A DNA stretch of 63,968 nt, the filler included, from Octopus bimaculoides (taxonomy: Eukaryota), in the NCBI RefSeq assembly GCF_001194135.2. It is 11 parts of 9 records of this genome, joined end to end, with 100 filler letters (N's around TTAATTAATTAA, not from the genome) between each part and the next. Parts side by side here need not be neighbours in the genome. Positions count along the whole stretch, not along the records: positions 19,762 to 23,768 come from NC_068981.1; positions 23,869 to 28,844 come from NC_068985.1; 9 more parts are not named here. One strand, 5' to 3'. The translations under genes and the position numbers were made by a program. Each line of letters begins with the position of its first letter. Within the stretch, counting starts at the first letter, position 1. The notes beneath the pieces are model-generated. The model searched no databases and was not told the origin of the DNA. It saw nothing but the letters and a program-made list of their open reading frames with translations. Below, piece by piece: positions 23,346-28,944 of the stretch.

Positions 23346-24043
23346 GGCAAGTAGCGATCGGCGGGCGTCGTCTGTCTTCTCCCATTAATATCATCTATTT
23401 TGTTTCATTCATCACATTTTTGTATATTGTCCAGCCCGCATTGCTTCTATGTAAAGACGCTTGTGGCTAATTTTATGAAATAAAGGGATATTATCCCATA
23501 TATACTGTTTAATCAGTATTTACGCGTTGAAAAATATATCTTTCTATTCGTACTACTATACATTTCAGCGCTTCAAAAACAAACTTAAATTTGTTTACAT
23601 ATGACGTAATTTATATATATACATATACACACGCTAATACACGACTTATAATACCCAATCCTGTTCATACAACGACTGGGGCAAACTAGTCGGTATACAG
23701 CACTTACTCGGTATTACCTGTATCCTCTTGGGTTTGGTTAAATCCAATGCCCTCCTCAACCTTATATANNNNNNNNNNNNNNNNNNNNNNNNNNNNNNNN
23801 NNNNNNNNNNNNTTAATTAATTAANNNNNNNNNNNNNNNNNNNNNNNNNNNNNNNNNNNNNNNNNNNNACAGTAACTGCACGATAAAGTGAAGTATATTG
23901 CCACTTAAGTGTGGCTGACCCCTAGGGGTGGATGTTACTGTTGCTTTTAGCCCCAGGAGGACATCTCCTCCAGCTGGCTTATCGACGCACTACTGTATCC
24001 TGTTTGCCAAGGGAAGTTATCCCTCCCATCATGATCTGTAGCA

Positions 24044-24088
24044 CGAACGGACCCGGGTTTCAGGGTTATTTCCCTTCGTCAGCGTCCG
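24044..24088 (-). ncRNA. Complete minimal type I hammerhead ribozyme
   Basis: Minus strand CGGACG-CUGACGA-AGGG AAAUAA CCCU-GAAAC-CCGG-GUC^CGUUCG; 6-bp stem I (one G-U), 4-bp stem II, palindromic stem III ACCCGGGU. Confidence 0.9.
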
Positions 24089-24499
24089 ATAGCCACTGGT
24101 CTTCGATGAGAGAGATAAATTCTTGGCAATCTTATGTATACTTTTCCAGTGAAATTCTTCACTTTTATCGAAAAGGTGAAAATAACCCTGAAACCTAGGT
24201 CCGTTCGTGCTACAGATCATGATGGGAGGGATAACTTCCCTTGGCAAACAGGACACAGTAGTGTGTCGTTAAGCCAGCTGGAGGAGATGTCCTCCTGGGG
24301 TTAAAAGCAACAGTAACATCCACCCCTAGGGATCAGCCACACTTCAGTGGCAATATACTTCACTTTATCATGCAGTTACTGTTAATACTTCATTTGGAGA
24401 ATTAACATTGCTTGTTTTCACCTTTTCGATATCAGTGAAGAATTTCACTGGAAAAGTATACATAAGATTGCCAAGAATTTATCTCTCTTATCAAAGATC

Positions 24500-24534
24500 A
24501 GTGGCTATCGGACGCTGACGAAGGGAAATAACCC
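24500..24534 (+). ncRNA. 5' half of the same hammerhead, cut by an assembly gap
   Basis: cggacgctgacgaagggaaataaccc then N-run. Confidence 0.7.
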
Positions 24535-24758
24535 NNNNNNNNNNNNNNNNNNNNNNNNNNNNNNNNNNNNNNNNNNNNNNNNNNNNNNNNNNNNNNNNNN
24601 NNNNNNNNNNNNNNNNNNNNNNNNNNNNNNNNNNNNNNNNNNNNNNNNNNNNNNNNNNNNNNNNNNNNNNNNNNNNNNNNNNNNNNNNNNNNNNNNNNNN
24701 NNNNNNNNNNNNNNNNNNNNNNNNNNNNNNNNNNNNNNNNNNNNNNNNNNNNNNNNNN

Positions 24759-24802
<44 letters not shown>

Positions 24803-26733
24803 GCACAGAAACATATATATATACCTATTTATTTATGTAAATGTAAGTATGTATTTATATATAATTACCCAATTAAAATGTAGCACAGGAAAACGACAAA
24901 GGAGAAAAATGAGAAACAGAAAAAATAGACGTAGTGGAAACGGACAGAATCAACACTATCGTCTGTCGACCAAATATCGTCGAAATATAACAAGAAAATA
25001 TGAAAACTATGCACATATCGGTAGATAAAGACCGGCTCTGATGCGAAAGATATATGGAATAAAGAAGGGCAGTAACAGGAAAATAATGAACGTTACAGTG
25101 AAATTGTATCAAACAAGGATTATTTTTCAAAAATGCGACAAAAATGACGCGTCGTCTGATATAACTCTCATAGGAAACATGGTGATTCTTTCAGCGATAG
25201 GATAATATATACATATTTTACGAAGATCTATACACCTTTTGCAGTCCGAGGAACTAGCGACACGTTTAAATTAAAGCTCTTAGACAATTGCGGAGCTCGG
25301 AAAACTTCTAAACTTCACAATGTTAAATGGGAAAAGGACAAATAGTTTAAAACGAGACGTTCATGTGGTACATTTTCCAACTGGAGAGGAAACATGAAAT
25401 TGCGCGTGCGCGTGTGTGAGAGAGAGAGAGTGAGAGAGAGAGTGAGTGAGTGAGAGAGAGACAGACAGACAGCGAGGGGAAGATGAAGAGCCGTACAGAG
25501 ATTAATGGCATTTGTGGTGGAGGACAAGAACAATGGAATACAGAAGATTGAAAGGTACGACAGAATAAATAGATACAAAGAAGTAGGTGGAAGGTAAAAG
25601 TAGGTGAAAATACTAAGGTAGATACAAAATAGAAATGCAGATATTATTATGAAATCAAAAAAAAGGAAACACTCTACTTATATCTACAGTTTGTAGATGT
25701 AAGTAGAGTGATGAGTAAAGTGAAACGTAGATAACATACAATGGATGGTGCAGACATGGACAATGGTACAATGGAAAAAAGCGAGGGCAGCAGATAAATC
25801 ACTGTACAGAAGAAGAGATGATAAGTAGAAAGAGAGATGTTCCCTCACGAAATAGAAAGGACTTGTGGCTCGAGGAAAAGTTTGAGTAGCGTTATATCAA
25901 AATAATATAAACGTAGCACAAGGAAGGAGGAAAAAAAACATATGAAAAAGGAAAAACACAAACAATAAATGAGGCAAGTTTCTAACGATTGTGTGTTTGT
26001 AGATTGTTATACGTGGTGTACAGATTGTCTATACGATGTAAATGGAGGCAGTCAGAACTTTAGATATTTATTTAGTGCCTTCATTTCGTTTCGGATATTC
26101 ATCAGGAAAGATCATTTGTACAGAACATTTACACCTTAAATATGTATGTTATTTGAAGAAATATGAAGTTGAAATGAGATGTGACTGCACAGATGTTTTG
26201 AATCTATGTATGTGATTATATGCGTGTGTTTGTATGTGTATTTAAGTATATGGGTGGTGAACATTATGAGGTTTGGTAAGGACAAAAAATGCAAAAGGGA
26301 ATGAAAGCAAGAAAGGTGGAAAGAAAGAAGGGTACTACAAATTATTCCCAATTTACGCAAAATTCCGTTGTTCCCAAGGTATGATTAATATATTTAACTC
26401 TCATTCTTCTCACTTAAACTTGTCTGCATATGCATCATACATTCTGAAATTGTTTTTCTTTATAAAATAAACCTAACTCATTTATATTCTTACTGTATAT
26501 AATAACTTTACTTGTGAGTTATATCCTCCTTTCGGACTAATTAACTATGTATGTACGTGTACTCGAAAGCATTAACACATATCAGTACGTATAATAAATG
26601 TGTATATATATATATATATATATGGATAGATAGATAGATAGATATATATATATATATATATATATATAGATATACATACGCACACACACACACATACACA
26701 CACACACCCACACACCCACACACACACGCACAT

Positions 26734-26962
26734 GGGCGAGCTGGCAGAAACGTTAGCACGCCGTGCGAAATGCTTAGCGGTATTTCGTCTGCCGCTACGT
26801 TTTGAGTTCAAATTCCGCCGAGGTCGACTTTGCCTTTCATCCTTTTGGGGTCGATTAAATAAGTACCAGTTACGCACTGGGGTCGATATATTCGACTTAA
26901 TCCGTTTGTCTGTCTTTGTTTGTCCCCTCTGTGTGTAGCCCCTTGTGGGTAGTAAAGAAATA
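26734..26962 (+). mobile_element. SINE family B, full length, low divergence
   Basis: ggcgagctggcagaaacgttagcacgcc...gagttcaaattccgccgaggtcgactttgcc...gtagtaaagaaata. Confidence 0.93.
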
Positions 26963-27139
26963 ACACACACACATATATATAATGCAGAAATTGTACAACA
27001 TATATAAATGGATGATGAGTAAAGCACCGACACAATTCCGATTACCTGTTGCCATCTGTCGATTTACTACAACTACAGAAACACACAGACGCATACACAC
27101 ACAGATATACATACAACTCTAGTCATAATATAACCGTTA

Positions 27140-27560
27140 GTGATGTCTTAATCAACCTATAGACAAATGTTCATGTCGTGATAGGACTAAATGTAAGCTC
27201 TTTAGTAATTGTAATATCGATAATGTAATTTATGAAAGCATAGTTAGATCTAAGAACAATATTAATAAAATTATAAAGAAGACTTATATTGGATCAACAG
27301 CTAATGAAATTTAAAAAAAAGAATATCCCAGCACTACCAGACCTTTAAAAATCACAATTTAAGTAAGTCTACAGGCTTAAGTAAATATATAAGGGAACTG
27401 AAATCTAGGAAAAGAGATTACACCCGTAATTAGAGTATTATAGGTAGCGTCCATTCCTATAATATTGGGAATAAAATGATTGTATTATGCATAACTGAAT
27501 TTATGAAAGTACTACATTCTAGAAATGAATTACTAAACACATGATTTTTTGGTCAGAAGG
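27140..27560 (+). pseudogene. Decayed PLE GIY-YIG endonuclease fragment
   Basis: KKTYIGSTANE(F)KKRISQHYQTFK..KSTGLSKYI across frameshifts. Confidence 0.65.
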
Positions 27561-28137
27561 TGGGAGTTTTTTGTCAGGCATAACATGGCGTTGATAGTAT
27601 AGAACGTGTTTATTTTTTACCTTAGTGTTCAAAATAGACTATTTAAAGACAAATTTAACTTCAATGCTTGACAGCCAGTCGATGGTTTAACAAGAGGCAA
27701 ATCCGAAGTCACTGTCAAACATAATTTTCTTCAAGAATAATGTGTGCGGTGTGCGTGTATGTGTGTTAATGTGTGTGTGCGCGCACGCACTCGCACATAA
27801 ATATATCTATTATATTTGCTTTCTAATTGATATAAAATACAGATGATAATCGTATCACCATGAATATGACTTTATTAATTATTGCCTATTTTTACTATGC
27901 CCATTAAATTCGAAGAATTTGATCTTCACCTAATAAATCGATAGATCAAATTTTAACAATATATAAATAATAGAGTTGTGGCAATCAGAAAAGATAATTG
28001 ACTTCTGTGAGTAAAACGTGCATTATGTTAAAAAAAAACCAATACGACATATGCATTTCCCAACATTTTCTCGGTGTTTTATTTGAAATAGGAAATTATA
28101 TCATATAATTGTGGACTATGTCAAGAAGCGTTTAAAT

Positions 28138-28318
28138 CTGCGCTTTCTAAACTATGGGTCCTGACCCCAAATGTAGGTGAAACACTGGAAGTTCAGTCTA
28201 TATGTCATTTCAAAACGCACAGTATTTAACGTGATACGTTGTATTTAATACCGGGGAACGCGAAAAATCTCGTATTGCAAAATGCGGTCACGAATGAAAA
28301 AAAGTTTAAAAAGCGCTG
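28138..28318. mobile_element. hAT-type MITE
   Basis: Ends ctgcgctttctaaact / agtttaaaaagcgctg (2 mismatches); flanks gtttaaat / atttaaaa resemble a decayed 8-bp TSD. Confidence 0.55.
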
Positions 28319-28944
28319 ATTTAAAAACTCGAATATTGACAGTTTTCGGTTTATGATCATGATATTCTTGCTGCTGCTGTTGCTGTTGTCATCCCGAACG
28401 CCTAGGACAGCTCTGATTAATTTGCTCTGTGATTAACTGGAAAAACAGACGTGACAATTATCGACTTTGTTTTTTTGCTAATACCATGTATCGTGACGAT
28501 ATTATCCATTGCGTCGTTTCCTTTCTTGTTAACTCTTGTTTTGTTCATCACGTGACATCAAAAACTCTACTTGCACACACATATATACATGCACGCTCAG
28601 GGACACAAGCGCATGCACGTATTTAAACGCAGACGTATATATAACTATTTATATATATGTATATATTGTACATATACGTATGTAGCAATCAATTTATATA
28701 TCTATATCTAGCGGGTCTTGTATCTACCTCTCTCTCTCTTTCTCTCTATGAATATATATGTGCGCTGGCGCGTGATTGTACGCATACGTATTTAAAACAT
28801 ACATGTATTAATGCTTATATATGTATATATATATATATATATATNNNNNNNNNNNNNNNNNNNNNNNNNNNNNNNNNNNNNNNNNNNNTTAATTAATTAA
28901 NNNNNNNNNNNNNNNNNNNNNNNNNNNNNNNNNNNNNNNNNNNN

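What the first reader, a model, noticed from the sequence alone, without database searches (positions are those of the whole stretch)
23869..24534. 346-bp hammerhead-punctuated repeat unit (candidate cephalopod retrozyme) caught at a head-to-head inversion junction
Seen: the layout is A-B-A'-x-B' between two gaps, which is a tandem unit (A-B-x, 346 bp) meeting its own inverse. A complete type I hammerhead spans the B/A boundary on the minus strand (24044-24088, predicted cut between 24050 and 24049). On the plus strand its 3' half starts at 24180 and its 5' half recurs at 24500-24534, exactly one period later. The unit has no ORF and many local palindromes (cccctagggg, cacttaagtg, atcatgat, ggagg..cctcc). 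Known: metazoan non-LTR retrozymes and PLE pLTRs are short tandem units delimited by type I HHRs; retrozymes yield monomeric linear and circular RNAs. Inference: this may be an undescribed non-autonomous retrozyme family that produces ~346-nt (circular) RNAs and is mobilised by PLE RT. The copies differ by about 4-5%, so it is not a simple read-duplication artefact.
Basis: partly seen in the sequence, partly recalled or inferred. Interest (0 to 1): 0.9.

Follow-up and report, generated by a model that had tools for sequence, protein, structure and literature searches.

The report
Hammerhead-ribozyme repeat, two inverted copies
This 666-base stretch holds two diverged, head-to-head partial copies of a 346-base non-coding repeat carrying a self-cleaving hammerhead ribozyme, which fits the already known animal "retrozyme" class and is a new example, not a new kind.

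Summary
Bases 24185→23869 (minus sense, 317 nt) and 24180→24534 (plus sense, 355 nt) are two copies of one unit, 95.3% identical. They are joined 5'-end to 5'-end at a 3-nt microhomology, and the period is 346 nt.

A complete type I hammerhead lies at 24038-24096 (minus strand), with the cut predicted between 24050 and 24049. All 13 core bases are present. Helix I is 6 bp, then a UAU/U internal loop, then 5 bp. Helix II is 4 bp. Helix III is 2 bp with a palindromic loop.

My descriptor finds only this site, and in 1 of 3000 shuffles. A covariance model built from another animal-type hammerhead family scores it 43.8 bits. Rfam Hammerhead_1 does not report it, plausibly (not isolated) because A10.1-U11.1 replaces G-C.

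The unit has no ORF, 42.5% GC, a ribozyme in one polarity only, and a strongly self-paired fold (z = -5.8). Hammerhead-to-hammerhead spacing is 346 nt, and the 4.1-kb flank holds no RT or endonuclease domain.

This matches metazoan non-LTR retrozymes (described 2020, including molluscs). Head-to-head truncated copies are a known Penelope-like-element signature. Expression, RNA circles, copy number and host species could not be tested.

The parts
23869..24185 (-). Copy 1 of the repeat unit (317 nt), sense on the minus strand. Its 5' end is truncated at the junction (about unit position 214), and its 3' side is cut by the edge of the piece.
   Evidence: Inverted-repeat arms; alignment to copy 2 with 15/317 differences.
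24038..24096 (-). Complete type I hammerhead with extended helix I: GUGGC-[UAU]-CGGACG CUGACGA AGGG(AAAUAA)CCCU GAA AC(CCGG)GU C | CGUUCG-[U]-GCUAC.
   Evidence: Read from the sequence. Only descriptor hit in the piece, 1/3000 shuffles. Model R1 gives 43.8 bits with all 12 pairs standard. Rfam Hammerhead_1 is negative.
24049..24050 (-). Predicted self-cleavage site, 3' of C17 in GUC (between 24050 and 24049).
   Evidence: Position in the hammerhead consensus. Cleavage itself is not tested.
24180..24182 (.). Head-to-head junction. A 3-nt AAA microhomology (imperfect over 24178-24185) joins the antisense unit at about position 214 to the sense unit at about position 325.
   Evidence: Overlap of the repeat arms; comparison with the expected continuations of both copies.
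24180..24534 (+). Copy 2 (355 nt = 1.03 units), sense on the plus strand. It runs into the real scaffold gap inside its second hammerhead.
   Evidence: period 346.
24189..24207 (+). 3' half of the hammerhead in copy 2: UGAAAC(CUAG)GUC|CGUUCG, cut 24201|24202. Loop III is CUAG here and CCGG in copy 1; both are palindromes.
24383..24411 (+). Segment 'x' (29 nt) of the unit, seen only in copy 2 because copy 1 is truncated before it.
   Evidence: Gap between repeat arms I1 and I2 in copy 2.
24501..24534 (+). 5' half of the next hammerhead, one period (346 nt) downstream: GUGGC UAU CGGACG CUGACGA AGGG AAAUAA CCC, then the gap.
   Evidence: Identical to the same part of copy 1; partial hit of model R1 at 24523-24534.

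Best explanation
The stretch is a fragment of a non-autonomous, non-coding retroelement of the metazoan 'non-LTR retrozyme' class. These are also known as hammerhead-bearing satellite repeats and are thought to derive from the terminal repeats of Penelope-like elements (PLEs).

Shown by the sequence: a 346-nt unit with one canonical type I hammerhead, in one polarity only. Two diverged partial copies are joined 5'-end to 5'-end.

Inferred mechanism:
- Transcripts that span two or more units fold the hammerhead. This may happen within one unit (2-bp helix III) or, more stably, as a double hammerhead in which the palindromic ACCCGGGU or ACCUAGGU segments of two ribozymes form an 8-bp helix III.
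- The ribozyme cuts after GUC and releases 346-nt monomers with 5'-OH and 2',3'-cyclic phosphate ends.
- A roughly 40-bp imperfect helix that extends hammerhead helix I holds the two ends side by side. A host RtcB-type tRNA ligase can then close them into a highly self-paired circle.
- Linear multimers or circles are copied into DNA by the RT/GIY-YIG protein of an autonomous PLE. That protein can prime on both strands of the target, which would explain an inverted, 5'-truncated copy abutting a direct copy at a microhomology.
- The 4.7% divergence between the arms indicates an old insertion.
For: Hammerhead:
- All 13 core nucleotides are present, with 6-bp helix I, 4-bp helix II, and a 2-bp helix III capped by a palindromic tetraloop. 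This is the 'canonical metazoan' architecture described in PMC4209133.
- It is the only descriptor hit in the piece, found in 1 of 3000 shuffles.
- Model R1, built from another canonical type I family, scores it 43.8 bits, E about 1e-9, with no broken pair. Rfam Hammerhead_1 scores one copy of that other family (L006) 32.5 bits, just under its 34-bit gathering cut-off.
- R1 also shares letters with it that my fetching pattern did not fix: CUA in the helix I internal loop and AAUAA in loop 2.

Unit:
- Period 346 nt and GC 42.5%.
- Longest open frame in a synthetic trimer is 62 aa; no protein relatives were found.
- Circular MFE is -111.5 kcal/mol, z = -5.8 against shuffles. The closing stem is the extended helix I.
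- The antisense strand has no CUGANGA box.

Not an autonomous PLE: hammerhead-to-hammerhead spacing is 346 nt, and no Pfam domain is found in six frames of 24759-28844.

Dimer model: RNAcofold gives the double hammerhead as the MFE for both homodimers (-49.9 and -46.4 kcal/mol).

Literature:
- Retrozyme features: 150-450-bp tandem units, GC below 50%, self-paired circRNAs, 350-390 bp in mussel.
- PLE insertions carry an inverted 5'-truncated copy.
- A PLE protein cleaves and extends both target strands.
- Retrozymes are related to PLE terminal repeats.
Against: - Rfam Hammerhead_1 reports nothing even at E<=10.
- The most conserved helix II pair, G10.1-C11.1, is A-U here. Activity could be reduced or lost.
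- As a single motif, the active fold (-14.6 kcal/mol) is less stable than an alternative fold (-22.2).
- Only 1.03 units of one copy and 0.92 of the other are visible, so no array, copy number or target-site duplication can be seen.
- The 15 differences between copies show no bias toward keeping the predicted pairs: 6 keep a pair, 5 break one, 4 are unpaired.
- No other copy of the family was found in any searchable collection, so there is no comparative support.
- No RNA data are available.
Confidence: 0.7

Rival explanations
1. It is the terminal repeat (pLTR) region of an ordinary autonomous Penelope-like element. The RT/endonuclease ORF would lie in the scaffold gap (24535-24758, true size unknown) or beyond the left edge of the piece.
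For: PLEs carry hammerheads in their pLTRs, form partial tandems, and often have an inverted 5'-truncated copy next to the upstream pLTR. Retrozymes and pLTRs are sequence relatives.
Against: - Successive hammerheads in copy 2 are 346 nt apart with no ORF between them. In copy 1 the roughly 180 nt after the ribozyme are non-coding.
- The ribozyme is the canonical type (6-bp helix I with internal loop, 4-bp helix II). It is not the minimal PLE type, which has a 7-8-bp helix II and a 4-5-bp helix I.
- There is no RT or GIY-YIG signal in the 4.1 kb to the right.
Confidence: 0.08
2. It is a decayed relic: a satellite-like repeat descended from a retrozyme. Its hammerhead no longer cleaves because the G10.1-C11.1 pair is lost, and it is no longer transcribed or mobile.
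For: Rfam is negative. The 10.1-11.1 pair is A-U. The copies are 4.7% diverged, mostly by transitions. There is no excess of pair-preserving changes. CpG observed/expected is 0.45 in the unit against 1.09 in the flank.
Against: - No core nucleotide is mutated in either copy, and A-U keeps the pair. Compensated changes at 10.1/11.1 occur in the cricket hammerhead satellite family, and axolotl retrozyme hammerheads with a U-U mismatch there still cleave.
- The only changes inside the ribozyme turn one palindromic loop (CCGG) into another (CUAG).
Confidence: 0.15
3. The head-to-head junction, and possibly the apparent tandem order, is an assembly or library chimera in a short contig of repeat DNA and not a genomic structure.
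For: The contig is only 666 bp and ends in a scaffold gap. Repeats are prone to misassembly. The junction rests on a single sequence.
Against: - The arms differ at 15 sites, so they are not one molecule read twice.
- The junction is asymmetric (unit position about 214 against about 325). That excludes a strand switch at a palindromic k-mer or a missed hairpin adapter.
- The microhomology is only 3 nt, far below any assembly overlap.
- Such junctions are expected for PLE-type insertions.
Confidence: 0.1

Closest known systems
Metazoan non-LTR retrozymes (Cervera & De la Peña, NAR 2020, PMC7229834), e.g. the 350-390-bp units of the mussel Mytilus galloprovincialis and the 220-240-bp units of the coral Acropora millepora
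   Same: Canonical type I hammerhead once per unit. The unit is short (346 nt, within the 150-450 range), non-coding and low in GC (42.5%). The monomer RNA is predicted to be highly self-paired. There is no LTR, PBS or PPT. The ribozyme is in one polarity only.
   Different: The unit sequence has no detectable similarity to anything retrievable here. The helix II closing pair is A-U instead of G-C. Only a head-to-head pair of partial copies is visible, not an array. Expression and circularity are unknown.
Minimal hammerheads in pLTRs of Penelope-like elements (Cervera & De la Peña, MBE 2014, PMC4209133; Craig et al. 2021, PMC8557442)
   Same: A type I hammerhead in a retroelement repeat. A palindromic helix III/loop 3 that suggests dimeric action. 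An inverted 5'-truncated copy adjoining a direct copy.
   Different: No RT/GIY-YIG ORF lies between hammerheads. The helix I/II proportions are canonical, not minimal, with a defined helix I internal loop.
Classical hammerhead satellites: newt satellite 2, Schistosoma Sm-alpha, Dolichopoda pDo500 (PMC2837043)
   Same: Repeats of a few hundred bp transcribed into self-cleaving RNAs. Helix III is short and dimers are used (newt). The cricket family shows compensated variation at 10.1/11.1. From memory, the Schistosoma ribozyme has a similar UAC bulge in helix I and a CAAAUA loop 2. That is a lead, not a test.
   Different: Different sequence and different host. Those families are known as long arrays with demonstrated cleavage.
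Canonical type I hammerhead family in metagenome contigs L001, L002, L004-L007
   Same: Same helix lengths, loop sizes and palindromic loop 3. There is 89% identity over the 27-nt core region. The family model scores the window motif at 43.8 bits. The family also sits in a tandem unit (L006).
   Different: It has a G10.1-C11.1 pair. Its unit is about 1354 nt and has no similarity outside the ribozyme. Its host is unknown.

Membership tests
Hammerhead ribozyme, type I | Conserved core C3 U4 G5 A6 N7 G8 A9 / G12 A13 A14 / A15.1-U16.1 / H17 with no mutation (criteria of Perreault et al. 2011, PMC3088659) | tested here: met
   CUGACGA ... GAA A...U C, read at 24044-24088 on the minus strand; descriptor hit.
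Hammerhead ribozyme, type I | Three helices with helix I open and helices II and III closed by loops; the pairs next to the core are all formed | tested here: met
   Helix I is 6 bp with one G-U. Helix II is AGGG/CCCU. Helix III is AC/GU. All 12 pairs are standard in the model alignment. The 10.1-11.1 pair is A-U, not the usual G-C.
Hammerhead ribozyme, type I | Reaches the Rfam RF00163 gathering score (34 bits) | tested here: not met
   No Hammerhead_1 match at E<=10 on the 4976-nt, 91-nt or 49-nt stretch. The control hammerhead in L006 scores 32.5 bits.
Hammerhead ribozyme, type I | Canonical metazoan proportions: helix I 6 bp, helix II 4 bp, helix III 1-2 bp with a small palindromic loop (PMC4209133) | tested here: met
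   6 bp / 4 bp / 2 bp plus CCGG (copy 1) or CUAG (copy 2).
Hammerhead ribozyme, type I | Loop 1 / loop 2 nucleotides for the tertiary contact | tested here: inconclusive
   The internal loop UAU/U lies 6 bp from the core and loop 2 is AAAUAA. CUA and AAUAA are shared with an independent family.
Hammerhead ribozyme, type I | Self-cleavage 3' of H17 | not testable with these tools
   Needs an in vitro transcription assay.
Metazoan non-LTR retrozyme | Tandem repeats of 150-450 bp (dimers to multimers), each with a type I hammerhead | tested here: inconclusive
   The period is 346 nt over 1.03 units. The order B-A in copy 1 and A-x-B in copy 2 implies a repeating or circular template. Any array is hidden by the gap and the piece edge.
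Metazoan non-LTR retrozyme | Non-coding, with no LTR, PBS or PPT, and GC below 50% | tested here: met
   Longest frame 62 aa; no homologues; GC 42.5%.
Metazoan non-LTR retrozyme | Monomer RNA predicted to be stable and highly self-paired | tested here: met
   Circular MFE -111.5 kcal/mol against -78.8 ± 5.6 for shuffles, z = -5.8; 63% of bases paired.
Metazoan non-LTR retrozyme | Expressed as linear and circular monomer RNAs; many genomic copies; coexisting autonomous PLEs | not testable with these tools
   No host genome or transcriptome is searchable. No copies were found in the metagenome, viral, prokaryote or protein collections.
Penelope-like element (autonomous) pLTR | RT plus GIY-YIG ORF between successive repeats/hammerheads | tested here: not met
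   The next hammerhead follows after 346 nt of non-coding sequence. No Pfam domain is found in 24759-28844. The content of the gap is unknown.
Penelope-like element (autonomous) pLTR | Minimal hammerhead: long helix II (7-8 bp), short helix I (4-5 bp), helix III absent or minimal | tested here: not met
   Helix II is 4 bp; helix I is 6+5 bp with an internal loop.
Viroid-like / delta-like circular RNA replicons | Ribozymes in both polarities; RNA-only replicon | tested here: not met
   The antisense strand has no CUGANGA box. No other ribozyme family is found in Rfam. The sequence is embedded in genomic DNA with an inversion junction.

The most novel reading that the evidence does not exclude
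The palindromic loop 3 may act as a subfamily-specific dimerisation code. The only two changes inside the ribozyme convert CCGG to CUAG, keeping an 8-nt self-complementary helix III segment. The double hammerhead is the predicted ground state for CCGG+CCGG and for CUAG+CUAG, but not for the mixed pair. Self-cleavage, and hence circle production, would then work only between cognate neighbouring units. In addition, the head-to-head microhomology junction would be a direct footprint of PLE-type priming on both target strands, acting on a retrozyme RNA.
Probability: 0.12. Interest if true: 0.5.

Novelty: new member of a known kind. Interest (0 to 1): 0.25.

Why it matters
If the host is a cephalopod, this would add that lineage to the animals known to carry hammerhead retrozymes. 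I found no paper in the held library describing one there. It would also give a clean example of a retrozyme copy with the inverted, 5'-truncated architecture typical of Penelope-like-element insertions. [quoted passage not shown] It does not open a new question: the ribozyme, the element class and the insertion architecture are all already described.

Tried and rejected
- Rfam cmscan on three nested stretches gave no hammerhead hit. The miRNA-family hits are microsatellite artefacts. The 'MIR8706' hit (24046-24205) is only the hairpin formed by the two inverted hammerhead halves.
- A search for other copies of the family found nothing. The exact 26-mer of the ribozyme gave 0 hits in metagenome, viral and prokaryote-genome collections. 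A degenerate hammerhead pattern gave 0 hits in viral contigs.
- All open frames of the unit, concatenated as a protein query to catch spurious ORF calls on other copies, gave no hit.
- Exact-product look-ups of two window ORFs found nothing on record.
- Six-frame Pfam scan of the 4.1-kb flank for PLE RT/endonuclease remnants found none. BLASTN of the unit against the flank found only chance matches.
- Mapping the 15 inter-copy differences onto the predicted fold to look for covariation gave no signal: 6 keep a pair, 5 break one, 4 are unpaired.
- A viroid-like reading was rejected because only one polarity has a ribozyme.
- A missed-adapter or palindromic-k-mer artefact was rejected because the arms differ and the junction is asymmetric.
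- ARAGORN found no tRNA in the piece.

Full report
**Scope.** Only 23869-28844 is genomic sequence. The run of 224 N at 24535-24758 is a real scaffold gap.

**Observation.** The repeat finder reports no direct repeats and two inverted pairs: 23869-24071 with 24180-24382 (203 nt, 96%) and 24063-24185 with 24412-24534 (123 nt, 95%). Read in ribozyme sense, copy 1 runs 24185→23869 on the minus strand (317 nt). Copy 2 runs 24180→24534 on the plus strand (355 nt).

Copy 2 returns to the same sequence after exactly 346 nt. Copy 1 shows B directly followed by A. Copy 2 shows A, a 29-nt segment x (24383-24411), then B. The template must therefore have been a repeating or circular 346-nt unit.

The copies differ at 15 of 317 sites: 11 transitions, 4 transversions, no indels.

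The junction is a 3-nt AAA microhomology at 24180-24182. It joins unit position about 214 (antisense) to about 325 (sense). Because the arms differ and the junction is asymmetric, a read-through hairpin or a strand switch at a palindromic k-mer cannot explain it.

**The ribozyme.** The minus strand of 24038-24096 reads GUGGC-[UAU]-CGGACG CUGACGA AGGG(AAAUAA)CCCU GAA AC(CCGG)GU C|CGUUCG-[U]-GCUAC.
- All 13 core positions are consensus.
- Helix I is 6 bp, then an asymmetric internal loop, then 5 bp. Helix II is 4 bp with a 6-nt loop. Helix III is 2 bp with a palindromic tetraloop.
- The predicted cut lies between 24050 and 24049.
- These are the proportions given for canonical metazoan type I hammerheads (PMC4209133).

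A descriptor I wrote finds only this site in the piece on either strand, and a site in 1 of 3000 dinucleotide shuffles of the whole piece.

Rfam Hammerhead_1 does not report it at E<=10, even on a 49-nt stretch. As a control, a degenerate pattern fetched seven metagenome loci. Six of them carry another canonical type I family. Rfam scores that family at 32.5 bits.

A covariance model built from that family scores the window motif end to end at 43.8 bits, E about 1e-9, with no broken pair. The next best hit in the piece is 6.2 bits. The core and spacing of those loci were fixed by my pattern, so that part of the score is by construction. The shared CUA of the helix I internal loop and the AAUAA of loop 2 were not fixed by the pattern.

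The clearest core-adjacent difference from the control is A10.1-U11.1 in place of the highly conserved G10.1-C11.1; helix I and loop 3 also differ in sequence. The Perreault criteria require only that this position be paired. Compensated changes there occur in the cricket hammerhead satellite. Axolotl retrozyme hammerheads with a U-U mismatch there still cleave. Membership in the hammerhead class is therefore well supported. Activity is unproven.

**Monomer or dimer.** As a single 63-nt motif, the hammerhead fold (-14.6 kcal/mol) loses to an alternative fold (-22.2). For two identical motifs, the predicted ground state is the double hammerhead with an 8-bp intermolecular helix III (-49.9 kcal/mol for CCGG, -46.4 for CUAG). 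The mixed pair does not adopt it.

The only two differences between the copies inside the ribozyme turn CCGG into CUAG, so the palindrome is kept. This is a single event. It could also be a tandem dinucleotide mutation, so it is suggestive only.

**The unit.**
- The cleavage-to-cleavage monomer (24202-24534 plus 24189-24201) is 346 nt with 42.5% GC.
- Its circular MFE is -111.5 kcal/mol against -78.8 ± 5.6 for shuffles (z = -5.8). The antisense strand gives z = -3.2.
- The closing stem of about 40 bp is the outward extension of helix I. After cleavage it would hold the two ends together.
- The longest open frame in a synthetic trimer is 62 aa. No protein relatives exist in the 5.8-billion-protein collection.
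- The antisense strand has no CUGANGA box.
- The 15 differences show no preference for keeping predicted pairs.

**Surroundings.** The 4.1 kb right of the gap is AT-rich (34% GC) and full of microsatellites. It has no Pfam domain in any frame and no fragment of the unit.

**Interpretation.** Every testable feature matches metazoan non-LTR retrozymes. An autonomous Penelope-like element (PLE) is unlikely. Consecutive hammerheads are 346 nt apart with no ORF, and the ribozyme is canonical, not the minimal PLE type.

The head-to-head, 5'-truncated arrangement is the structure described for PLE insertions. It fits the finding that a PLE protein cleaves and extends both target strands. A 2026 preprint argues that retrozymes derive from PLE terminal repeats.

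The mechanism is inferred from those papers, not shown here: self-cleavage of multimeric transcripts, ligation to circles by a tRNA ligase, and reverse transcription by PLE machinery.

**Novelty.** No paper in the held library links retrozymes or hammerheads with cephalopods beyond a PLE survey. The host cannot be verified here. At most this is a new family in a known class.

Noticed in passing
window 26734-26962 (+): A SINE-like element that looks tRNA-derived, with a B-box-like GAGTTCAAATTCC at 26804-26816. It sits between (CA)n at 26681-26732 and a following (AC)n run. ARAGORN and Rfam call no tRNA there.
   Followed up: partly
window 24759-24799: A (TG)20 microsatellite starts immediately after the real scaffold gap. 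PLEs are reported to insert preferentially into microsatellites (PMC8557442). The gap prevents linking it to the repeat.
   Followed up: no
window 24764-24835, 26631-26699, 27738-27801, 28568-28844: The Rfam sub-threshold 'mir-297 / mir-466 / mir-3149' hits all lie on (TG)n/(TA)n simple repeats and are artefacts. The 'MIR8706' hit at 24046-24205 is only the hairpin formed by the inverted hammerhead halves.
   Followed up: yes
L006 790-834 and 2144-2188; also L001, L002, L004, L005, L007: Metagenome contigs from an unidentified eukaryote carry a canonical type I hammerhead (Rfam 32.5 bits). In L006 it occurs twice, 1354 nt apart, within a tandem unit of about 1.35 kb. This looks like an unusually long retrozyme-like repeat. 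L002 has no ORF of 150 aa or more.
   Followed up: partly
window 24202-24534 vs 24759-28844: CpG observed/expected is 0.45 in the repeat unit against 1.09 in the flank. Several inter-copy differences are CpG to TpG/CpA. This may mean the repeat is methylated. The numbers are small.
   Followed up: no
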